Made by a program: the position numbers and the translations under genes
Part shown: piece after piece, positions 3,830-22,621 of the stretch
Layout: every line of letters begins with the position of its first letter
How positions within the stretch are numbered: position 1 is the first letter of the stretch
The notes under the pieces: generated by a model
Databases searched by the model: none
What the model was told of the DNA's origin: nothing
Seen by the model: only the letters and a program-made list of their open reading frames with translations
NCBI GenBank assembly: GCA_025603075.1
Contig: MU626364.1
Span: 1-64,000, forward strand
DNA: 64,000 bases
DNA from: Neoconidiobolus thromboides FSU 785
Taxonomy: Eukaryota; Fungi; Entomophthoromycota
Direction: 5' to 3'

Positions 3830-4105
3830 ATGAAACTAACTCAATATCTGGTAATATTAGGTGCCTCATTAACACAAGTGGAATCTGTCTGTAGAGCTAA
3901 AGCCAAGTCAGATAAGTTATTAGGAAATTATCCAAGTGATCATTGCTACCGTGGTGGTGTTGATGCTTGGGTGACTTATAAAGATTTCCCACCATGTTGG
4001 ATCTATGAAGAAGAGAAATCACGTTATGCATGCTATAATTACAAAGAAGGCGGTAAATGTGATACCTGGCCTGGAATGAAAGATCTCGGACCTTCTAAAG
4101 TTTGA
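3830..4105 (+). CDS. Small secreted cysteine-containing protein (91 aa, orphan)
   Basis: Intronless ORF with higher GC than its flanks. Hydrophobic N-terminus MKLTQYLVILGASLTQVES resembles a signal peptide; 5 Cys in the 72-aa mature part. TATAAA at about 3765 and AATAAA at about 4193. Confidence 0.75.
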   Translation: MKLTQYLVILGASLTQVESVCRAKAKSDKLLGNYPSDHCYRGGVDAWVTYKDFPPCWIYEEEKSRYACYNYKEGGKCDTWPGMKDLGPSKV

Positions 4106-6119: not shown

Positions 6120-6172
6120 ATAAAAGGGTCTTAAGTACTTATACAAATCTTTAAAAACAATTTATTTTGAAA

Positions 6173-6937
6173 ATGTCAACTGAACAAAAAGCAATTATAA
6201 AATTACCATTATTCGTAAAGGAGTTAGCTACTACCATCTTAGGAGAAGCCTATTGTTATGAAGAAATCGTCGAAAGGTTGAACTTTAAAAATGTAGACTG
6301 TTTGAAATTGGGTTTATCAAAAGGATTAGGTTTGGTTATCGTTGCTGGTGGTTGTATTGTTAAAATTCCACAAATTATTAAAATTATAAAAGCCAAGTCA
6401 GCTAAAGGTATTTCTTTATTATCTTATATTTTAGAAACCTTTAGTTACATTATATCCATCGTTTATAACTTACGTTCCGAAAATCCATTTTCTACCTGGG
6501 GTGAGACTTTAGCAATTACATTTCAAAATGCTTTTATCCTTTTATTAATTTTATACTATAATGGTTCCTTGTTCACTGCCTCAATTTTATTAGCTGCTGC
6601 AGCGATATTTTACACAACTTTAAATAATCCAACTATTGTTGATAGTGAGCTTTTACAATTGCTCCAGGCTTGTACCATCCCAGTTGTATTGATTTCAAGA
6701 ATCCCTCAAATTATCTCAAACTATAAAAACGGACATACTGGACATTTATCAGCTTTTGCAATCTTCAACTACTTCTTTGGTACCTTAGCCCGTGTTTTTA
6801 CTACCATCCAAGAGGTTGATGATAAGATTATTCTAACCAGTTATCTTTTAGCTTTATTCCTCAATACTGTTCTCGCTGGTCAAATGACTTACTATTGGAA
6901 TGCTAAGCCAGTGGCTGAAACTAAGAAAAAACAATAA
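6173..6937 (+). CDS. MPDU1: Mannose-P-dolichol utilization defect 1 (PQ-loop) protein
   Basis: Two PQ-loop repeats (IVKIPQIIKII; ISRIPQIISNYKNGHTGHLS) and multiple TM segments. True ATG is at 6173; the ORF track starts at TTG 6167. Confidence 0.9.
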   Translation: MSTEQKAIIKLPLFVKELATTILGEAYCYEEIVERLNFKNVDCLKLGLSKGLGLVIVAGGCIVKIPQIIKIIKAKSAKGISLLSYILETFSYIISIVYNLRSENPFSTWGETLAITFQNAFILLLILYYNGSLFTASILLAAAAIFYTTLNNPTIVDSELLQLLQACTIPVVLISRIPQIISNYKNGHTGHLSAFAIFNYFFGTLARVFTTIQEVDDKIILTSYLLALFLNTVLAGQMTYYWNAKPVAETKKKQ

Positions 6938-9144: not shown

Positions 9145-11388
9145 ATGAACCAATTTATATCATTAATTTTAACTACCGTCCTCCTTCAGGTCACCGCCAA
9201 ATCTGTCCCTAAAGATGATGGCAGACAAACTTCTCAATGGAATAAACTTTCTTTACCATGGGAGTACCCTGAAGCTCGTGTCATGAAAAGCTACTATGAT
9301 ACATATCATGGAATTGGTGTAAGAGACCCATACCACTGGTTAGAAACTCATACTAGTCAAGAAACTAGAACCTTTTGGGATAAAAACAACAAGCTATTAC
9401 ACAAATACCTTAACCAAAATCCACATAAACAAGTTATTTATGACTCTGTAAAAACTTTGTTCTCTGCTCCTTCTCCAGGAAAACCAGTAAAGCATGGTGA
9501 TTATTATTATTATACTGAGCGTGCTTCTCTCCAAGGCAACTCAGTTTTATATCGTAAAAAGAATCTTGCTGATCAACCACAAGTTGTTTTAGACCCAAAT
9601 CCGCTTTCACCAGATGAAACTGCTTATATTAAATTTAACTCATTCTCTTCCGATAATAAGTATCTTTTAATTGCTGTTTCCCGTAAAGGTTCAGACTGGA
9701 CTGATATTCGTGTCCATGAAAATAATGAAGGATTAAAGGAACTCGAAAGACTTATCTGGACCCAAGATGGTGGTGTAACATGGTCAACAGATGATAAGGG
9801 TTTCTTTTACTCTAAAGACCCTGCTCCAAAAGGTATCACTTGGGAAGACGCTGGTCTTAATACTGATCCAGGTCTTGATAATAGATTATATTACCATCGG
9901 GTTGGTACTCAACAAAAGGACGATATCCTCATTTGGGCAGGTAGCAAGGATAGTGCTGAATACCCAAGTATTGAATATGCAGGCCCTAACAATGAATATT
10001 TCATCCTTCAGCTTTATCGCTCCACTGCTGATAGAACATACACCTATTATGCTGACGCCACTGATTCTAATAAGAATGGTGTAACTAAAAAGCCAGATTT
10101 CAAAAATATTTATCACGATTATGATGGTATTGCTCAATATCTTGAATCAGTTAATGAAAAGGAACATTTATTCTTAGTTACTCGTGGCACACCATACCGC
10201 AAAATTGTTCAAGGTACTTTAGAGAACCTTCGTTCCGCTAAAGATGTTTTACCAGAACAAAAAGGGTATGGATTAATTCAAGCCAAATTTGGTAAAGACA
10301 AGATTGCAGCTTCCTATATTAAAGATTCAACATATCATATTAAAGTGTTTAATAAGAATGACACATCTAAAGCAATTAGTGAAATTGACTTACCAATTGG
10401 TGGTATTAAGGGATTTAAATTTATTCGTGATGAAACTGCTATCAATTTCAATGTTACCGATTTCTTCTCACCAACCGTAGCTTATGAAGTTGAACTTAAT
10501 GACACTAAAAATAATAAATTGATTTATACTGAGCCAAGTTTACCTGGATTCAAACCGGAATTATTTGAAATGAAATTAGAACATTACAAGAGCAAAGATG
10601 GTACTATTGTACCTATTACTTTAGCTTATCGTAAAGGCACTAAATTAGATGGAAACAACAATGTTTACTTATATGGTTATGGTGGCTTCAATTCTATCAA
10701 TACTCCAGCTCCACGTGCACATTGGTTAGCTATGTTACAATCTTTAGATTTAGTATTGGCTATTGCACATATCCGTGGTGGTGGTGAAAATGGTGATCCA
10801 TGGTATACTTCAGCATCAAGATTAAATAAGCAAGTTAGTTATGATGACTTTGAATATGCTTCAAAATTCTTAGTCAACAAAAAGTATACTCAACATAATA
10901 AGATTGTTGTTAATGGACGTTCTAATGGTGGTACATTATCTGGTGTTTCCTTTACTCAAGCTCCTGAATTATTCGGCGCTGTTGTAGCTGATGTTGGAGT
11001 TATGGACTTAGTCAGATATCAATCATTCAATGATGGTACTGGATGGTTCGATGATTTTGGTGATGTAATTCATAGCAAGGAAGAATTCTTGAACGTATTG
11101 AAATTCTCCCCATACCATAATATCCGTTGCAATAGACCATATCCACCTTTATTGATCACTACTGGTTCTCATGATGATCGTGTTTCAACTTTACACTCTC
11201 TTAAATTTGCTGCTAGATTACAATCCCATTATAAAGATCATAAACATCCTATTCTCTTGCAAACTGCAAATAACACTGGTCACGGATGTACAGGATGTGG
11301 TAAACCAGTTAAATTAGATATTAATGATAAGACAAATATGCTTACTTTTATTTCAATGGTGTTTAATATTGTACCTAAACCATTATAG
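9145..11388 (+). CDS. Prolyl oligopeptidase (S9A) paralog 1 with a predicted signal peptide
   Basis: DPYHWLE N-terminal motif, GSDW propeller loop, YGYGGF oxyanion motif, RGGGENG, nucleophile GRSNGG, HDDRV, catalytic His in TGHGCTGCGKP. Intronless, 747 aa; AATAAA at 11403. Confidence 0.93.
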   Translation: MNQFISLILTTVLLQVTAKSVPKDDGRQTSQWNKLSLPWEYPEARVMKSYYDTYHGIGVRDPYHWLETHTSQETRTFWDKNNKLLHKYLNQNPHKQVIYDSVKTLFSAPSPGKPVKHGDYYYYTERASLQGNSVLYRKKNLADQPQVVLDPNPLSPDETAYIKFNSFSSDNKYLLIAVSRKGSDWTDIRVHENNEGLKELERLIWTQDGGVTWSTDDKGFFYSKDPAPKGITWEDAGLNTDPGLDNRLYYHRVGTQQKDDILIWAGSKDSAEYPSIEYAGPNNEYFILQLYRSTADRTYTYYADATDSNKNGVTKKPDFKNIYHDYDGIAQYLESVNEKEHLFLVTRGTPYRKIVQGTLENLRSAKDVLPEQKGYGLIQAKFGKDKIAASYIKDSTYHIKVFNKNDTSKAISEIDLPIGGIKGFKFIRDETAINFNVTDFFSPTVAYEVELNDTKNNKLIYTEPSLPGFKPELFEMKLEHYKSKDGTIVPITLAYRKGTKLDGNNNVYLYGYGGFNSINTPAPRAHWLAMLQSLDLVLAIAHIRGGGENGDPWYTSASRLNKQVSYDDFEYASKFLVNKKYTQHNKIVVNGRSNGGTLSGVSFTQAPELFGAVVADVGVMDLVRYQSFNDGTGWFDDFGDVIHSKEEFLNVLKFSPYHNIRCNRPYPPLLITTGSHDDRVSTLHSLKFAARLQSHYKDHKHPILLQTANNTGHGCTGCGKPVKLDINDKTNMLTFISMVFNIVPKPL

Positions 11389-11519
11389 TTATTTTTTAAT
11401 TAAATAAAACCTAATTTTGAACTAATTTCATTTTATATTTTCAAATAAATTCACTTAGATATATTAAAACTTGATTAAAAAAATATTATTTTATTAAAAA
11501 TTAGGTAATTTTAATTGAA

Positions 11520-13769
11520 TTAGATTCTCTTTGGTACAATGTTAAATACCATTGAGATAAAAGTTAAAATGTTTGTTTTGATTTCAATGTAAAGTCCAGT
11601 TGGTAAACCACAACCAGTGCAAGCATGGCCAGTATTATTAGTAACTTGTAAAAGGGAAGGATGTTGGCTATATTTGTACATAGATTGAATCTTGGCAGCT
11701 AATTTCATTGAGTGTAAAAAGGAGACACGATCATCATGGGTACCGGTATTAATTAATACTGGTGGATATGGCTCGTAAGGACGGACGTTATGATATGGTG
11801 AGAAAGTTAAGATGTTACGGAATTCAGTTGCATTATTGATAGCATCACCAAAATCATCAAACCATCCACTTCCATCATGGAATAATTGGTATCTAGTTAA
11901 ATCCATAACACCAACATCAGTTATGACAGCTCCAAATAACCATGGATTTTGTACTAAAGATACTGCTGATAATGTACCACCATTAGAACGACCATTGACG
12001 ACAATTTTACTATGTTGAGTGTATCCTTCATCACATACCCATTGTGCTGCAGCATAAAAATCGTTGTATGAGTTTTGTCTCTTCATACGAGAACCATCTT
12101 GATGCCATTTTAAACCATTTTCACCACCACCTCTGATATGTGCGATAGCAATCATCACATCAAAAGATTGTAATAAATTTAACCAATGAGCATTTACTGA
12201 AGCAGTGTTGATAGCATTGAAACCACCATAACCATGTAAATACAAAAAGTTATTATTGTTCTTTTTGATACCCTTCTTGTGTACTAAAGTAATAGGAACA
12301 ACGTTGCTATCCCATCCGTAATAATATTCAATTCTAGTTTCGAATAAGTCTGGATTGATACCTGGTAATGAGTTTCCAGTTGCAACCAATTTATTTTCAT
12401 TTGTACTGCTGTAGATATCAAATTCATAAGATTTAGATGAATAGAAGAAATCACCCATTGAATATGAAATTTTGGTTTCATTTTCTTCAATTGTGAAGTC
12501 ATTCAATGAGCCAACTGGCAATTGGACGCTCTTGACTTCCTTTTCAATTTTATCACCATTAATTGAGAACACTTTAATGTGATAATAAGCTGCCTTAATA
12601 TAAGATGCTGCTACTATTTTCTTTCCAAATACAACTGATTGTAACCCAAATCCTTTTTGCTCAGGCAAATAATCTTTAGCGTTCTTTAAGTCTTCAAAAG
12701 AACCTTTAACTACTTTAAGGTAAGGTGCGTTACGGGAAGTCATAAAGTAATGAGTCTTGGAATCAATTGATTGTAAGTAATCAGTGGATCCATCCATTTG
12801 TTCAGTAGCTTTGATGAAATTAGGTCTTGCTAAGATACCATTCTTGTTAGATTCAGTAGCATCGGCGTAATAAGTCAAAGATATTGGCTCGGTGGATCTA
12901 GCAACTGAAACAACAAGATATTGGTTGTCGTTGCCAGCATAGCTAAGAGAATATCCTAGTCTAGTATCTTCCTTATTTTCAAATAATAACAAATCGTCTT
13001 TTTGTTGAGTACCAATACGATGATACCATAATTTATTATCAACACCAGGCATAGTGTCAATACCAGCATTCTCTAATGGCGTATCTTTTGGTGCTGGGAA
13101 GGTAGAGAAAAAGAAACCTTTGTTATCAGTTGACCAAGTTACAGATTCGTCACGAGTCCAAACTAAAGATTCTAACTTGGTGAATTTTTCATTGTTTTCA
13201 TAAACATCAAACACAGTCCAATCGGAACCTTTACGGGAGTAAGCAAGAACGACGTATTTATCATCAGAAGAAAATGAAGTAAAACGAATAATTCCGGTTT
13301 CACTTGGAGAAATAAGATTAGGGTTAAATAATTCTTCAGGTTTGGCATCTAAGGAAGATTTACGATATAAAACAGAGTTCCCTTGTAAAGATTTTCTTTC
13401 CAAATAATAGTAATAATCCCCATGCTTACTTGGCTCTTCGACTTCAGGAGCGCTTAATAACTTTTTAAAGTTATTTTCAATTATCGATTTGTGTGGACTT
13501 TGTTCAAGATAACTGTTTGTAAAGTCATTGTTTTTAGTCCAAAACTCAGTTGTTTCTGCGCTTGTTTGATTTTCTAACCAACGGTAAGGATCACGGATAA
13601 CTTTACCATGCATCACATCGTATGTATTGGAGTCATACTTGGCTGCTGGGTAGTTCCATGGTAAGCTCATCTTATTGGTAGATGAAAGTACACGCCCATC
13701 ACGTGCCACATCTTGACTGGTGACCAAGGATAAAACGGTCAAAACAAACACCTTTTGGAAGCTCATCAT
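11520..13769 (-). CDS. Prolyl oligopeptidase (S9A) paralog 2 with a predicted signal peptide
   Basis: DPYRWLE, HGYGGF, GRSNGG, HDDRV, TGHACTGCGLP; colinear with paralog 1. Intronless, 749 aa. Confidence 0.93.
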   Translation of the reverse strand: MMSFQKVFVLTVLSLVTSQDVARDGRVLSSTNKMSLPWNYPAAKYDSNTYDVMHGKVIRDPYRWLENQTSAETTEFWTKNNDFTNSYLEQSPHKSIIENNFKKLLSAPEVEEPSKHGDYYYYLERKSLQGNSVLYRKSSLDAKPEELFNPNLISPSETGIIRFTSFSSDDKYVVLAYSRKGSDWTVFDVYENNEKFTKLESLVWTRDESVTWSTDNKGFFFSTFPAPKDTPLENAGIDTMPGVDNKLWYHRIGTQQKDDLLLFENKEDTRLGYSLSYAGNDNQYLVVSVARSTEPISLTYYADATESNKNGILARPNFIKATEQMDGSTDYLQSIDSKTHYFMTSRNAPYLKVVKGSFEDLKNAKDYLPEQKGFGLQSVVFGKKIVAASYIKAAYYHIKVFSINGDKIEKEVKSVQLPVGSLNDFTIEENETKISYSMGDFFYSSKSYEFDIYSSTNENKLVATGNSLPGINPDLFETRIEYYYGWDSNVVPITLVHKKGIKKNNNNFLYLHGYGGFNAINTASVNAHWLNLLQSFDVMIAIAHIRGGGENGLKWHQDGSRMKRQNSYNDFYAAAQWVCDEGYTQHSKIVVNGRSNGGTLSAVSLVQNPWLFGAVITDVGVMDLTRYQLFHDGSGWFDDFGDAINNATEFRNILTFSPYHNVRPYEPYPPVLINTGTHDDRVSFLHSMKLAAKIQSMYKYSQHPSLLQVTNNTGHACTGCGLPTGLYIEIKTNILTFISMVFNIVPKRI

Positions 13770-16059: not shown

Positions 16060-18092
16060 TTAATATAACTCTAACACATATCTTTCCTCTTCCTTTAATT
16101 CTTCAATTAATTCTAATGCCTTCTTTGAGTCATATCCTTTTGTCAAACAAATTGCTTCTTTGACTGCATTTCTAACATCTAACTCAGGCCAAGTTGGACC
16201 ACAAAGATAAAAGTGAGCTTTCTTTTCCATAATCCACTCATTTAAGTATTGTTTATCTTGTTGCATTAAATTTTGAATATAGACCTTTTCCTTTTGATCT
16301 CTAGAGAAAGCTAATCTTAAATACTTTAATAATTCTTGTTGATGATAATCATCTAATTCATCACCATAAAGATATTCTTGTTGTCGATATCGAGATCCAA
16401 AATAAAGGGCCATTGGACCAACATTATGTCCTAGTTTTTGAAGATGATACCGTTCTTCAATAAACGCTCGGAATGGGGCCATTCCAGTACCTAATCCAGC
16501 CATAATAATTGGTTGGTCATCATTTGGTGGTAATTTCATAACACTAGGTTTAATAGCTACAGTGAGTTCTTCATTGATTTGTAGCTGATCTAAATAATGA
16601 GTAGCTAAACCATTACGTAAACCATAAGGAGTGTCCCAATGTACAGTAACTACTAGTAAGTGAACTTGATTAGGATGTACTTTATTTGAGGAAGATATTG
16701 AATAATGACGTGGTTCAATGGTAGGGATTAACTGAATTAAATCAGAAACATCTAACTGTATGGATTTATATTGATTGAAGATATCAAAATAACTAACAGA
16801 ATTAGCTAAATTAAATTTATATTCTTCTTCACCTTCTTTTTCACTTAATTTTAGTAAATGTTGTTTCTCATTATTATCAATAGCATAATTAGCTACATTC
16901 TTATAAAACAATTTATTAGGTTTACCGAATAAATCTAAATGTTGAGTTAATACTTGCCACCCAGTACGATAATAAGAAATAGTTGAATCTTCTTCATTCA
17001 ATAATTTTACAATTCGATCTTTATCAATATTAGGAAATCTCAATAATAGTAATTCAACTAAATTAGCTGGATTCTTGGGATAAACTGCTAAAGCATCCCC
17101 AATTTCATATTTTAATTGTTGGTTTGGTAAACTATCAAATTCTAAATGAAATACATTTCGATCATAATCTAATGGAGTTAAACGTTGTCGATGACTTAAC
17201 TTCAAAATCATGGGATTTTCGATATCTGGTCGAAGTATTTGCTCAGGTTCATAAATCTCTTTAAAAGCTAAATTCCATTTTAATTGTAAATTATAATTTA
17301 ATAATTGATTTTTCTTATTCAATATAGATATTTCTTTTGATGTATAAAAATTTAATTGTATCTTTTCGTCAACATTTATTACTTCTGACTGTATATTGAT
17401 AGGTAATAACTGTTGCTCTATTCCTTTTTTATATAATTCTATTTGCTCGTTAGAAATATTATATTCTTTTTGTATCCAAGATTGTAATTTAATATCTTTA
17501 AAATACCATAATAAACTCAATAAAATTCGAAAGTCTTGTTGATTATTATTAATTCTTAAATGATAATATTGAATTTGATTATTATCAATCTTTAATCTTT
17601 CAAATAATTTATTGTAATGAAGATTTTGATCCCCTAATAAAATAACTACTTTAACATGGGGATTCAATTTTAAATATAACGGTAATTTATAAAATTGATT
17701 GAAATTTAGATACAATAATTCATTTGGATTACTTGTAATTGTATGTTTATTATATTGATAATTAATAATAACTTGATGGGATTCAAAATGAACATTATTA
17801 ACACTTTCTTTTGTTGTACGTGTTAACAATTTATATTCTTTTTTTAATTTATTAAACGTTGAATTATTATAATTGAACTCATTATTTAATTGAGTTTCTT
17901 GAATTAATTGAAACTTAATAGCTAACTCATTATTATAATTTACTTCCTTAACATAATTTGTTTTGTTTAATTCATAAATTTTTTGTTTCATTTCAACAAA
18001 ATCTACAGCTTCTTTTGATAAATCAATATTGAAATTTAATACTTTAATTTTGGTATTGAATTTATATACTAAACTTAATAAATAATAATATA

Positions 18093-18129
<37 letters not shown>

Positions 18130-19119
18130 TTCTTCATCGGTATATTCAATTATAATAATTTTTTTATATTGATTTTTTTGTAATAGCTCGATTATTTTCT
18201 CTTTTACTACTTCATCTTCAAAAGCAACAATATTTAAAAGATCACTGTTGGTCTTCTTATCATTTAATATTAACTTCAATTGATCTATAGGTGGTAAATT
18301 AAATCCAATAATTAAATTATTGCTATTTTCATTATATTTAATATACTCTAATGCTTGATATTTTCTATTAGTTAACTGAAAATAAATATCAGTTAATTGA
18401 TTAAATGAATTAAGTTGTTTATCTTTACTTTGATTATAGAGATACTTAACTTGTTCGTTATTTAATTTATCAATATCACTAACTGTATATTCACTTTGAG
18501 AAAATAAATTGAATAGAAATATATGATGTCTTAATTCATTCTTATTAACTTCTCTTTCTCTCTCATACCATATAGCATTTAATACTGCCAAATCATAATC
18601 TTCCTGTTGATTACTACTAAAGATCAATTTATCTATTAACCTCACATTTTGAAATAACGCTTTTTTACTCGATTTCAAATCCAAAAGAAATAATAACTTA
18701 TTTAACTTGTTAAATTGTGGTAAATAATTAAAATAATCATCTGAATCTCCTGTAATAGCTATACTTTGATTTGGTGAAAAAGGTGATAAGTGATCGTGAG
18801 ATAAAGTAGATTTAGTTATTACTTGATGTTGAATAGGTTGATCAAAGACATTCTTCTCTAACAATGTATTTTGATTTAACGTATGATCAAATAATATAGT
18901 AATAAAATGATGAGATGCAGTTAAGATATAGTCGTAACTAGTGGAAGAAGAGAATGGGATAATAATAGATTGTTGATGAGTTGAATTTTGCTCACTTTCC
19001 GGAGTAGTTAAAGTGTAACTAGATATAGACTCTAAACTTGGCTCTCTTTTCAAATCTAATTCATAATCTAATTGACTATTTAACTTCACTGTATCTAAAG
19101 ATAATACTTCGGTTACCAT
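16060..19119 (-). CDS. MET10: Sulfite reductase [NADPH] flavoprotein alpha subunit
   Basis: C-terminal FAD/NADPH module: RHYSISSS, MAGLGTGMAPFRAF, YFGSR, FYLCGPTWP, ending ERYVLELY. 1019 aa, a Met10-like length; intronless. Confidence 0.88.
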
Positions 19120-20351: not shown

Positions 20352-22621
20352 GATAGAAGATTTATTTTATAATTATCCATTACGTAGAAAAGGGCTTAAA
20401 TCAACTAATGAAGAATATCAAATGATCTTAGATATAGCTAATCGGTATGCTGTTCATTCTGAAAACATTCATTTTAGTTGTAAAAAAATGAATAGTACTT
20501 TTCCAGATTTACAAATTAGTAAAAATATGACAAAGAAAGAAAGAATTGGAAAAATTTATGGTAGAAGCATTGGACAGGATTTAATAGAGGTTAAAATAGA
20601 AGATAATATACTGGGGATTAAATGTGAAGGTTATATTACAGGGTTGGGGCATAAAGGAAAGAAAATGGGGTTTTTGTTGTTTATTAATAATAGATCAGTA
20701 ATGTGGAATAAGTTGAAAATAGCTATTGGGAATATTTATAATGGGTTATTGATGAAAGGTAATTTTCCTTTTGTATACTTGAGCCTTGTATTACCACCAG
20801 AAGATGTGGATGTCAATGTTCATCCGACTAAGAAAGAGGTAAGGATATTTTATCTGATAAGACAATGTCTTCAATTAATTTTAATGTTAGGTTTATTTTC
20901 TAAAAGAAAAAGAAATATTAAATTTAATAATAACTCATTTAACGGAAAAATTGGAAGAATTGGGAACAACTAGAGGATTTCAAACTAATGTAAGTTTTAT
21001 ATTAAATGTAAATTTAGCTATTTAATTATTTTGCTTTTGTTATAGATATTGGGTACTTTAACCCCGGTTAATTCATCTTCAACTAAAGTCAAAGTAGAAG
21101 AAGATAGAATCAAACAAGAAAGAAATGAACTAAATTTATCAACTTTAACTAATAATAACACACCGATAAAAGAAACAAATCAATCATCATTACAACTTCA
21201 ATCAATAATTAATTTCAATAATTCATTTAATGCATCAACTAATTTTAGTCAAAGTATCAATCAGTCTAATACTTCCTTTAATAGAGATAATTCCTTTTTA
21301 AACACAACGACTAATAACACTAATAATACTAAGTTAATTGCTCCATCAAAAAGAAGGGATAATTATTTAATACGTACAGATCATCAACTACAAAATTTAA
21401 ATGCATTTTATCAACCCAAGTTAAGTCTAAGGGAAAATAATAAGGAAAAGGAAAAGGAAAAGGAAAAGGAAAAGGAAAGAGAGGATGGGTTTATTCAGAC
21501 GAGTATTTTAGTAGAGAGGAATAAAAATAATAAGGAAGGGATAGTGGGAGATAGGATTTTGTTGACAATTAGTGAACAAAATAAAAGTAATGTAAATGAA
21601 CAGCTTAATCCTACTGTAAACGAGTTACCAATTACTTCAATAAACAATAAAAGGAAACGGGTATTAGTAAGATTAGAAAGTGTATTACAACTAATTAATG
21701 AGTTTAAAATGGAATGTGATTATGGTAATTTATTATTTTATTATTAGACAATGTTTTGTTAATTTCTATTTTAAAATTTTTAATTTAGATATTAAAAATA
21801 GATTACAAGAACATACAATGGTAGGTAAAGTAGATTGTAGAAGAATATGTGTTCAATCTGGAACTGGATTGTACTTATTAGATGTTTGGAAATTAAGGTG
21901 AGAATGATTATTGTATCATAATTTATAATCTATATTAATTTCTTATTTTTAATTTTTAATTTCTAATTAGTTATGATTTATTTTATCAATTAACTTTACA
22001 AAATTTTTGTAATTTTTCTACTATTTTATTAAAAACCCCAATGTCAATTTATGATGTTACAAAAATGATAATAAACTCCAGTAAAATCAAAATAGTCTTT
22101 TCAAAAGAGATAATGGAATATGATGATTTAGCAGAGGGATTAACTCAATTTTTAATTCAAAAGAGAGATATGTTATTAGAATATTTTAGTATTGAGATTA
22201 ATGAAAAAGGCTATTTGACTCATTTACCTTGCTTATTAGAGAATTACATACCCTGTGTGTATAAAATTCCTTTGTTTTTAGTTAAATTGGGAACAAAAGT
22301 AAGTTATTTATATTATATTACTCTATTGATAAAATGTTTTAAATTTAAATTTAAATTATTCTATTCCTATAGGTTAATTGGAATGAAGAAAAGAGTTGTT
22401 TTTATACATTAAGTCAACAGTTAGCATGGTTATATCAATTAGAACCAAATCCTAAAGTAGATAATGAGGATAATGAAACAAGGGAAATGAAACAATATTA
22501 CTGGCAAATACAGTATTTACTATTACCTCAATTTAAAAAGGGCTTATTTTACCCAAGGAAAGAAGGGGTAACTATGTTGACTTCTTTACCAAAACTGTAT
22601 AAAGTATTTGAAAGGTGTTGA
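19768..22621 (+). CDS. MLH1: DNA mismatch repair protein MutL homolog 1, multi-exon
   Basis: GEVIQRPANAIKELIENSLDA, DNGCGI, TTSK, GFRGEALSS (GHKL ATPase); VDVNVHPTKKE; C-terminal LYKVFERC*. Confidence 0.95.
20315..20348. repeat. (AAT)~11 microsatellite in an MLH1 intron
   Basis: Direct reading of the sequence. Confidence 0.9.
21442..21477 (+). repeat. (AAGGAA)6 coding repeat giving (KE)6 in the MLH1 linker
   Basis: Direct reading of the sequence. Confidence 0.9.

What the first reader, a model, noticed from the sequence alone, without database searches (positions are those of the whole stretch)
11272..11627. Conserved CxxC insertion and N-glycosylation sequon in the catalytic His loop of both POPs
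Seen: canonical POP has AGHGAGKP; here the motifs are NNTGH-G-CTGC-GKP (His 11281-11283, Cys 11287 and 11296) and NNTGH-A-CTGC-GLP (His 11625-11627, Cys 11619-11621 and 11610-11612). This is a 3-residue insertion carrying two Cys. These are the only Cys shared by the paralogs (each has just 3), and an N-N-T sequon precedes the His in both. Established: the His loop of POP is the mobile element that assembles the triad on open/closed switching. Inference: a disulfide staple or redox switch, or a metal site, built into the catalytic loop of a secreted POP. I do not recall this being described.
Basis: partly seen in the sequence, partly recalled or inferred. Interest (0 to 1): 0.7.

Follow-up and report, generated by a model that had tools for sequence, protein, structure and literature searches.

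The report
CxxC insert beside POP catalytic histidine
Two neighbouring, expressed prolyl oligopeptidase genes of an AT-rich fungus (nearest relative: the fly pathogen Entomophthora) carry a rare three-residue insertion that puts two cysteines right after the catalytic histidine; the motif is real and conserved in a tiny lineage, but whether it is a disulfide brace, a switch or a tolerated relic is untested.

Summary
Two tail-to-tail, intronless S9A prolyl oligopeptidase (POP) genes lie at 9145-11388(+) and 11520-13769(-) and are 55% identical. Their His loops read GH-G-CTGC-GKP and GH-A-CTGC-GLP, against the canonical GH-G-A-G-KP, a net gain of three residues.

- **Rarity:** of 397 His loops aligned, only the window pair and two near-identical Entomophthora muscae proteins (GHGCGGCGKP) carry the motif. 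A profile search of 1.84 billion representatives shows an isolated clade: 1473 and 1291 bits, then 542.
- **Clade features:** the clade is monophyletic on a long stem, has signal-peptide-like N-termini, and differs at many sites that are near-invariant in other POPs.
- **Expression:** contigs from public runs look like separate unspliced transcripts and confirm the Cys codons.
- **Origin:** the insert reads as a 9-nt tandem duplication of G-C-G.
- **Function:** a local Cys-Cys disulfide bracing an enlarged His loop in a secreted enzyme is the most likely reading, at about 0.45. No coordinates were available, so it stays an inference.
- **Sequon:** the N-N-T sequon is absent in E. muscae and sequons are not enriched, so that part is weak.

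The scan noted the same motif on an overlapping window of this genome, not on other DNA. I class it as a new variant of a known kind, of moderate interest.

The parts
9145..11388 (+). p1: S9A prolyl oligopeptidase paralog, 747 aa, intronless
   Evidence: ORF. Pfam Peptidase_S9_N scores 2.5e-63 and Peptidase_S9 6.4e-44. The best solved-structure match is a prolyl endopeptidase at E = 3e-116. The AF2 model has pLDDT 92.3 and TM 0.85-0.91 to solved POPs. Transcript-like contigs cover 9145-11422.
9145..9198 (+). p1 signal-peptide-like N-terminus, about residues 1-18, with V-T-A before a candidate cleavage site
   Evidence: A hydrophobic stretch has mean Kyte-Doolittle hydropathy about 2. AF2 gives a low-confidence N-terminal helix. 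The POP core starts near residue 37 in the PDB alignments. The -3/-1 rule was applied by hand; no SignalP was available.
10921..10923 (+). p1 catalytic Ser593, in G-R-S-N-G-G
   Evidence: Aligned to porcine Ser554. The column is invariant in the 86-sequence alignment.
11173..11175 (+). p1 catalytic Asp677, in H-D-D-R-V
   Evidence: Aligned to porcine Asp641. Invariant column.
11269..11277 (+). p1 N-N-T sequon, Asn709-Thr711
   Evidence: It is shared with p2 but absent in E. muscae.
11278..11307 (+). p1 His loop G712-P721 (G-H-G-C-T-G-C-G-K-P), holding catalytic His713 and the +3 insertion with Cys715 and Cys718
   Evidence: The DNA reads as two 9-nt units, GGATGTACA and GGATGTGGT.
11389..11519 (.). 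131-nt spacer between the two convergent genes' 3' ends
   Evidence: Contigs of X1, X2 and X6 stop here. A loose end of adapter plus T-run at 11475 marks a likely poly(A) site of p2.
11520..13769 (-). p2: S9A prolyl oligopeptidase paralog, 749 aa, intronless, 55% identical to p1
   Evidence: AF2 pLDDT is 91.9. Transcript-like contigs cover 11475-13769 and beyond.
11601..11630 (-). p2 His loop G714-P723 (G-H-A-C-T-G-C-G-L-P), holding catalytic His715, Cys717 and Cys720
11631..11639 (-). p2 N-N-T sequon, Asn711-Thr713
11733..11735 (-). p2 catalytic Asp679
   Evidence: invariant column D679.
11985..11987 (-). p2 catalytic Ser595
   Evidence: invariant column S595.
13716..13769 (-). p2 signal-peptide-like N-terminus, about residues 1-18, with V-T-S before a candidate cleavage site
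   Evidence: An in-frame Met34 just before the POP core leaves an internal start possible.

Best explanation
**Shown**
- The two genes are recent paralogs of a small, fast-evolving POP lineage. So far it is seen only in this AT-rich fungus and in Entomophthora muscae.
- On the stem of that lineage the enzyme gained a signal-peptide-like N-terminus, many substitutions at otherwise near-invariant catalytic-domain positions, and a 9-nt insertion directly after the catalytic His.
- The catalytic machinery is intact: Ser-Asp-His, Tyr473, Arg643, and the S1 residues Trp595, Phe476, Val580, Val644 and Asn555. The proteins are therefore most likely active post-proline endopeptidases.

**Inferred**
- The insertion most simply arose as a tandem duplication of an ancestral G-C-G unit. 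One such event would give both the extra length and the second Cys, turning GH-G-x-G-KP into GH-G-C-x-G-C-G-KP.
- In the oxidising secretory pathway Cys(i) and Cys(i+3) would form a local disulfide. This would close the three extra residues into a small ring and stiffen the enlarged, glycine-rich His loop, which must swing in to complete the triad. The insertion would then be tolerated, or the extracellular enzyme stabilised.

The gene pair, the insertion, its rarity, its conservation and its transcription are shown. Secretion, the duplication origin and the disulfide are inferred.
For: - **Gene pair and family:**
- **Insertion and exact motif:**
- **Rarity:** only P0001, P0002, P0300 and window p2 have C-x-x-C among 397 aligned loops.
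- **Isolated clade:** the exhaustive profile search gives 1473 and 1291 bits, then 542.
- **No S9A match to the motif elsewhere:** 185,579 bacterial and archaeal species genomes and JGI metagenomes gave only chance hits.
- **Single origin:** the clade has 100% SH-aLRT support on a stem of about 1.8 changes per site, and the window duplication came after the split from Entomophthora.
- **Conservation:** both Cys are invariant over a clade tree length of about 2.3 changes per site, while the other six Cys columns are not all shared.
- **Signal-peptide-like N-termini in all three proteins:**
- **Fungal POPs usually lack signal peptides:** PMC8469457, Dikarya only.
- **Transcription:** transcript-like, unspliced contigs include the start codons.
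- **Purifying selection:** 27 of 32 listed differences in a 96%-identical variant fall on third codon positions.
- **Tandem 9-nt units:** E. muscae reads GGCTGCGGC then GGGTGCGGG. The window reads GGATGTACA then GGATGTGGT. A one-Cys GHGCGKP form exists elsewhere without the insert.
- **His-loop mobility:** PMC3827171.
Against: - No structural measurement was possible. The models came without coordinates, and the loop is only moderately confident, with pLDDT about 72.
- Two invariant columns among three sequences are expected about 10% of the time by chance (31% invariant columns).
- Only two genomes carry the clade, so the conservation sample is tiny.
- Each window paralog has an odd number of Cys (3) and E. 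muscae has 7. Free thiols are therefore tolerated in these proteins.
- Other S9A lineages carry +2 to +7 insertions at the same spot without any Cys. A longer loop therefore does not need a disulfide.
- Secretion rests on hand-applied rules only. p2 also has an internal Met34 that could give a cytosolic form.
Confidence: 0.45

Rival explanations
1. Tolerated relic. The 9-nt duplication landed at a position of the His loop that accepts length changes. The two Cys persist because the loop is generally conserved, and they have no structural or regulatory role of their own, whether or not they oxidise.
For: About 7% of 397 homologs vary in length at exactly this place. Three unrelated lineages have +3 inserts without Cys: HGSGGRGKT, HGGGGAGKT and HGWENYGRP. 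The chance of two invariant columns is about 0.1. A single mutational event explains both Cys.
Against: Both Cys survive a clade tree length of about 2.3 changes per site, while all other Cys positions turned over. An unpaired, exposed Cys pair next to a catalytic His in an exported protein would be expected to be selected against.
Confidence: 0.28
2. Redox or metal switch on the catalytic His. The C-x-x-C-G sequence resembles a rubredoxin-type knuckle. With the adjacent His it would bind a metal ion, or it would cycle between dithiol and disulfide. Either way it would hold the His loop in or out of the active site and so gate activity.
For: The sequence H-x-C-x-x-C-G is invariant in the clade. 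The His loop is the element that completes the triad on domain closure (PMC3827171). The flanking glycines give the loop flexibility.
Against: No second Cys or His pair is conserved in the clade to complete a four-ligand site. The clade-specific His542 lies on a distant strand by fold topology (my inference). The models place the motif in coil, three to four residues before the C-terminal helix, and not at a helix N-terminus as in thioredoxin-type redox motifs. No thioredoxin fold is present.
Confidence: 0.12
3. Specificity change. The longer loop reshapes the leaving-group side or the domain interface together with the other clade-specific substitutions. This would give a different substrate range or a transpeptidase/macrocyclase-like activity, with the cysteines secondary.
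For: Many substitutions fall at sites 98-100% conserved in other POPs. These are T590 to N/H, P646 to T/F, D639 to S/T, L558 to T and A562 to V, plus I591 to D and Y599 to F in the loop beside the S1 Trp. His-loop length has been deliberately varied in a POP-family macrocyclase: PDB 5uzw is titled 'PCY1 G696Insertion Variant'.
Against: The core S1 residues and Arg643 are kept. No precursor-peptide-like gene is evident nearby; the neighbours are a PQ-loop protein, Met10 and MLH1. The papers on PCY1 could not be read.
Confidence: 0.1
4. The proteins are not secreted, because the N-terminal hydrophobic stretch is an anchor or is not used. The cysteines would then be reduced thiols in the cytosol.
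For: No signal-peptide predictor was available. p2 has an in-frame Met34 immediately before the POP core.
Against: All three clade proteins have an N-terminal hydrophobic stretch followed by small residues at -3 and -1. p1 has no Met between residue 1 and the core. The contigs extend only 13-19 nt upstream of the first ATG.
Confidence: 0.05

Closest known systems
Canonical S9A prolyl oligopeptidase/prolyl endopeptidase (porcine and human PREP, PDB 1qfm, 1h2w, 9q5g; Haliotis POP, 6jci)
   Same: It has a seven-bladed propeller plus an alpha/beta-hydrolase domain. It keeps the Ser-Asp-His triad, Tyr473, Arg643 and the Trp595 S1 pocket. TM-scores are 0.85-0.91 at about 30% identity.
   Different: - It has a signal-peptide-like N-terminus.
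- The His loop is three residues longer and carries two Cys.
- The nucleophile motif is G-R-S-N-G-G instead of G-G-S-N-G-G.
- Many otherwise near-invariant positions are substituted.
Entomophthora muscae hypothetical proteins KAJ9078488.1 and KAJ9074220.1 (P0002, P0300)
   Same: They are the only other carriers of the motif (GHGCGGCGKP). They are 45% identical overall and 58-60% in the catalytic domain. They have a signal-peptide-like start and share the clade-specific substitutions.
   Different: They have no N-N-T sequon before the His. They have 7 Cys rather than 3, and the N-terminal linker is shorter.
Exported bacterial POPs (the Aeromonas, Sphingomonas and Myxococcus enzymes in PDB 3iuj, 1yr2 and 2bkl)
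   Same: They belong to S9A, and many bacterial homologs have hydrophobic N-termini and few Cys.
   Different: Their His loop has the canonical length with no Cys. The tree does not place the CxxC clade inside the bacterial group.
POP-family macrocyclases (PCY1, GmPOPB, OphP)
   Same: They are POP-fold enzymes in which the His-loop region has been a target of engineering; the PCY1 G696 insertion variant is PDB 5uzw.
   Different: They have no CxxC and are not predicted to be exported. They act with linked precursor genes, and none is seen near the window pair.
Secreted alpha/beta-hydrolases with a disulfide next to catalytic residues (cutinases, PETase-type enzymes). This comparison is from my own knowledge and was not tested here.
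   Same: The idea is the same: an exported alpha/beta-hydrolase braces the loop that carries a triad residue with a disulfide.
   Different: Those disulfides link two separate loops, not an i/i+3 pair within one loop, and the families are different.

Membership tests
Peptidase family S9A (prolyl oligopeptidase) | N-terminal beta-propeller domain (Pfam PF02897) followed by the Peptidase_S9 catalytic domain (PF00326) | tested here: met
   Both domains are far above the gathering scores in p1 and p2.
Peptidase family S9A (prolyl oligopeptidase) | Catalytic triad Ser-Asp-His in that order, with Ser in a G-x-S-x-G-G elbow | tested here: met
   S593, D677 and H713 in p1, and S595, D679 and H715 in p2, fall in invariant columns. 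The elbow reads G-R-S-N-G-G.
Peptidase family S9A (prolyl oligopeptidase) | Oxyanion Tyr473, Arg643 and the S1 proline pocket (Trp595, Phe476, Val580, Val644, Asn555, Tyr599) | tested here: met
   All are aligned and kept except Tyr599, which is Phe. The substitution in the G-G-G-E-Y motif is at porcine position 510, not at the oxyanion Tyr.
Peptidase family S9A (prolyl oligopeptidase) | Overall POP fold | tested here: met
   The AF2 model has pLDDT 92. Foldseek gives TM 0.85-0.91 to POP structures at E about 1e-65.
Peptidase family S9A (prolyl oligopeptidase) | Post-proline endopeptidase activity on short peptides | not testable with these tools
   This needs an enzyme assay.
Thioredoxin-type redox CxxC | Thioredoxin fold with the first Cys at the N-terminus of a helix | tested here: not met
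   The fold is alpha/beta-hydrolase. DSSP of both models puts the motif in coil, with the next helix starting 4 residues after the second Cys. Loop confidence is only about 72.
Rubredoxin/zinc-knuckle metal site | C-x-x-C-G knuckle | tested here: met
   The sequence is C-T-G-C-G or C-G-G-C-G in all clade members.
Rubredoxin/zinc-knuckle metal site | A second conserved pair of Cys or His ligands to complete the site | tested here: not met
   No other Cys is shared by the three proteins. Apart from the catalytic His, no conserved ligand pair next to the loop is evident from sequence.
Secreted (signal-peptide) protein | Cleavable N-terminal signal peptide | tested here: inconclusive
   Each protein has a hydrophobic stretch plus small residues at -3 and -1 by hand. 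The AF2 N-terminal helices are of low confidence. No dedicated predictor or proteomics was available.
N-glycosylated His loop | Sequon conserved across the lineage | tested here: not met
   N-N-T is present in p1 and p2 but absent in E. muscae, and sequons are not enriched.

The most novel reading that the evidence does not exclude
The H-x-C-x-x-C-G motif is a built-in switch on the catalytic histidine. A dithiol/disulfide exchange, or metal capture by the two thiolates together with the His, would hold the His loop out of or in the active site. An exported eukaryotic POP of insect-pathogenic fungi would then be silent in the secretory pathway and switched on, or off, by the redox or metal state of the host environment.
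Probability: 0.1. Interest if true: 0.75.

Novelty: new variant of a known kind. Interest (0 to 1): 0.45.

Why it matters
POP regulation turns on the movement of the His loop. How that loop is controlled is a live question for POP, oligopeptidase B and the POP-type macrocyclases used in peptide engineering.

A natural lineage with a two-Cys ring built into the loop, directly after the catalytic His, gives a ready-made test case. It can address whether loop rigidity, redox state or metal binding tunes triad assembly.

The lineage is also an unusual eukaryotic POP that appears to be exported. It is found so far only in relatives of insect-pathogenic Entomophthoromycotina, so it is a candidate extracellular post-proline peptidase for host peptide or cuticle-protein breakdown.

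The practical value is modest until the enzyme is expressed and assayed.

Tried and rejected
- **Oxyanion Tyr.** I first read the clade's G-G-G-E-N, canonical G-G-G-E-Y, as loss of the oxyanion Tyr473. Counting the porcine numbering shows that residue is Tyr510. Tyr473 lies in Y-G-Y-G-G-F and is kept, so I dropped the idea.
- **Cys depletion as evidence for secretion.** It is not discriminating. The median is 4 Cys in 245 homologs, and many have 0-3.
- **Motif scans.** I scanned bacterial and archaeal genomes and metagenomes with the back-translated motif G-H-G-C-x-G-C-G-K-P. Each scan gave 3 hits, all in short GC-rich frames unrelated to S9A. The scan sees only this exact form of the motif.
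- **Fragment search.** A search with the last 188 residues, meant to find short transcriptome pieces of further clade members, found nothing above 50% identity and no CxxC.
- **S-S distance.** The structure tool returns no coordinates and none are stored in /data. A second model, of p2, only reproduced the coil state and the pLDDT of about 72.
- **Literature.** No paper in the held library links POP with a CxxC or a His-loop disulfide. The entomophthoralean genome papers only count S9 genes. The two PCY1 structure papers are not held.
- **Neighbourhood.** I looked for a peptide-precursor or RiPP context and found none.
- **Origin of the clade, fungal duplication or transfer.** It is unresolved, because the midpoint root falls on the clade's own long stem.

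Full report
**What is there**

The region holds two convergent open reading frames without introns. p1 runs 9145-11388 on the plus strand and encodes 747 aa. p2 runs 11520-13769 on the minus strand and encodes 749 aa. A 131-nt spacer separates them.

- Both match the POP propeller domain and the Peptidase_S9 catalytic domain far above the Pfam thresholds.
- They are 55% identical to each other.
- They match solved prolyl endopeptidases at E values down to 3e-116.
- AlphaFold models built on an 86-sequence alignment are confident: pLDDT 92.3 and 91.9, pTM 0.92 and 0.90.
- The p1 model superposes on porcine, human, mollusc and bacterial POP structures with TM 0.85-0.91.

**Check of the observation**

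  - In p1, His713 is at 11281-11283 and the Cys codons are at 11287-11289 and 11296-11298.
  - In p2, on the minus strand, His715 is at 11625-11627 and the Cys codons are at 11619-11621 and 11610-11612.
- HMMER alignments to porcine and Haliotis POP place a three-residue gap in the solved chains at this point. The canonical G-H-G-A-G-K-P has become G-H-G-C-T-G-C-G-K-P.
- Each paralog has three Cys, and only the CxxC pair is shared. The N-N-T sequon four residues before the His is the one sequon at the same position in both.
- Contigs of two public runs from different studies (X1, X2) match both genes. No difference is listed at these codons, so the motif is not an assembly error.

**How rare it is**

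- A word-based search of 5.8 billion protein clusters with the p1 catalytic domain returned one close relative. It is a 700-aa hypothetical protein of Entomophthora muscae, 60% identical over that domain, whose loop reads G-H-G-C-G-G-C-G-K-P. The other hits were at most 49% identical, and the His loops I could read in them lack the insert.
- E. muscae has a second copy, 694 of 700 residues identical, on another contig.
- The same search started from the E. muscae protein found nothing further.
- A search with a short C-terminal piece, meant to catch fragments, also found nothing further.
- An exhaustive profile search of 1.84 billion representatives gave 1473 bits for p1 and 1291 for the E. 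muscae protein, then dropped to 542.
- I fetched 410 proteins and aligned 397 His loops, counting window p2. The canonical six-residue length holds in 369. Only the four clade members have C-x-x-C.
- About 7% of lineages do vary in length at this exact spot. Three unrelated lineages have +3 inserts rich in Gly and without Cys. The site therefore tolerates length change, and the two cysteines are the unique part.
- Scanning one genome per bacterial and archaeal species, and the JGI metagenomes, with the back-translated motif gave three chance hits each, none in an S9A gene.

**The lineage**

- In a maximum-likelihood tree of 48 POPs, the two window proteins and the E. muscae protein form one group with 100% SH-aLRT support. 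The stem is about 1.8 changes per site.
- The window duplication is younger than the split from Entomophthora, with 95% support.
- The nearest proteins by path length are fungal. The midpoint root falls on the clade's own stem, so its origin is unresolved.
- The clade differs from other POPs at many positions that are 98-100% conserved elsewhere.
  - Changes I scored against conservation are, in porcine numbering, T590 to N/H, P646 to T/F, D639 to S/T, L558 to T, A562 to V and Y510 to N.
  - The loop next to the S1 Trp also carries I591 to D and Y599 to F.
  - The nucleophile elbow changes from G-G-S to G-R-S.
- The triad, Tyr473, Arg643 and the main S1 residues are kept. The enzymes therefore look active and proline-directed, but remodelled around the active site.
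- All three clade proteins start with a short hydrophobic stretch followed by small residues at -3 and -1. The POP core begins only at about residue 37 of p1.
- A survey of proline-specific peptidases in Dikarya found that most such fungal enzymes lack signal peptides (PMC8469457). An exported eukaryotic POP would therefore be unusual. This rests on hand rules, not a predictor.
- p2 has an internal Met34 just before the core, so a cytosolic form of p2 is not excluded.

**Expression and selection**

- In runs X1, X2 and X6 the contigs are 2.2-2.5 kb long. They start 13-19 nt upstream of each start codon and stop in the spacer between the genes.
- One contig ends at 11475 in adapter sequence plus a T-run. 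No joints were seen.
- This is the pattern of two separate, unspliced, polyadenylated mRNAs. The tool itself marks the RNA status of these runs as a guess.
- Run X6 holds a variant about 96% identical to p1. Of its 32 listed differences, 27 fall on third codon positions, which indicates purifying selection.
- The summed depth of the p1 contigs exceeds that of p2 in all three runs. The tool warns that this is a poor measure of expression.

**How the insert probably arose (inference)**

The six codons after G-H read as two 9-nt units.

- In E. muscae they are GGCTGCGGC and GGGTGCGGG. These encode (G-C-G)(G-C-G) and differ only at third codon positions.
- In p1 they are GGATGTACA and GGATGTGGT.
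- A one-Cys loop, G-H-G-C-G-K-P, exists without any insert in a mealybug POP-like protein.

A single tandem duplication of G-C-G would therefore create both the extra three residues and the CxxC. The origin of the pair then needs no selective story. Only its retention does.

**What it most likely does**

- The family's His loop swings in to complete the triad on domain closure (PMC3827171).
- Here that loop is three residues longer and rich in Gly.
- Both models place it in coil, three to four residues before the C-terminal helix. Its confidence is the lowest in the catalytic domain, about 72.
- If the proteins pass through the secretory pathway, two Cys three residues apart are likely to oxidise to a local ring. 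That ring would tie off the extra residues and stiffen the loop. I give this about 0.45.
- Retention of both Cys across the clade, while the other Cys positions are not all shared, fits this reading. With 31% of columns invariant among three sequences, it is not strong statistics.

The rivals are as follows.

- The insert is a tolerated relic, about 0.28.
- It is a redox or metal switch using the C-x-x-C-G knuckle and the neighbouring His, about 0.12. This is weakened by the lack of a second ligand pair and of a helix-N-terminal position.
- It is a specificity change in which loop length matters more than the thiols, about 0.10.
- The proteins are not exported, about 0.05.

**The glycosylation part**

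The N-N-T sequon is shared by the two paralogs. It is absent from E. muscae, which reads T-Q-Y-A-G-H. The window proteins have fewer sequons (4 each) than their Asn-rich composition predicts, 6.3 and 8.4. Shared descent is a sufficient explanation, and I give this part little weight.

**Known or new**

- The proteins are members of S9A by every sequence and fold criterion I could test.
- The His-loop CxxC is not described in the literature I could search. It is absent from all solved POP-family chains matched.
- The His-loop region has been altered by hand in a POP-type macrocyclase; PDB 5uzw is titled a PCY1 G696 insertion variant. I could not read those papers.
- I class the finding as a new variant of a known kind.
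- The scan had noted the same motif on an overlapping window of this same genome (s1-272348, s1-062801), not on other DNA.

**Limits**

- No coordinates were available, so no S-S distance could be measured.
- No signal-peptide predictor was available.
- Only two genomes carry the clade.
I infer an entomophthoralean-like fungus from the nearest homolog and from the base composition, which ranges from 19% to 34% G+C across 2-kb windows.

Noticed in passing
window 13668-13670 (p2 codon 34): p2 has an in-frame Met34 directly before the POP core (M-S-L-P-W-N-Y-P). An internal start could therefore give a cytosolic isoform. p1 has no equivalent Met.
   Followed up: no
window 9145-13769, runs X1, X2, X6: In all three runs the contig covering p1 has a higher mean word depth than the one covering p2: 581 against 126, 101 against 41, and 234 against 10. 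This hints that p1 is the more abundant transcript. The tool warns that contig depth is a poor measure.
   Followed up: partly
window 9145-11326, run X9 (organism D, 2025): Eight short contigs of 151-204 nt, each at least 99% identical, all lie on p1. None lies on p2. This may be a mixed or infected sample in which only p1 is seen.
   Followed up: no
window 9145-11364, run X6 (organism C): A variant of p1 about 96% identical has 84 differences over 2220 nt. Of the 32 listed, 27 fall at third codon positions, so a related strain or species has the gene under purifying selection. The listing was cut short, so I could not see its motif codons.
   Followed up: partly
proteins P0137, P0153, P0171, P0054, P0290-P0298, P0062, P0241, P0232: Other S9A lineages have +2, +3, +6 or +7 residue insertions at the same point after the catalytic His, mostly Gly/Ser-rich and without Cys. 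This spot is a recurrent site of length variation in POPs.
   Followed up: partly
proteins P0078 and P0322 (Planococcus citri POP-like, 427-429 aa): P0078 has a single-Cys His loop, G-H-G-C-G-K-P, of canonical length. This is the form from which a G-C-G duplication would give the CxxC. P0322 is a second, very similar hit whose loop I did not print.
   Followed up: no
L001 (E. muscae QTSX02002147.1) and P0300: E. muscae has two copies of the CxxC POP, 694 of 700 residues identical, on different contigs. They may be haplotypes or a very recent duplication. No second POP gene lies within 10 kb of the copy fetched.
   Followed up: partly
window 3830-4105 (+): A small ORF of 91 aa has a hydrophobic N-terminus, five Cys and no Pfam match.
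   Followed up: no
window 10789-10791 and 10918-10920 (p1 codons 549 and 592): There are clade-wide substitutions in two very conserved motifs. G-G-G-E-Y becomes G-G-G-E-N (porcine Tyr510), and G-G-S-N-G-G becomes G-R-S-N-G-G (porcine Gly553). The consequence is unknown.
   Followed up: partly
window 6167-6937, 16060-19119, 20422-20973: The neighbours are ordinary housekeeping genes: a PQ-loop protein, a Met10-like FAD/NAD reductase and an MLH1 fragment. No protease cluster or peptide-precursor context is present.
   Followed up: partly
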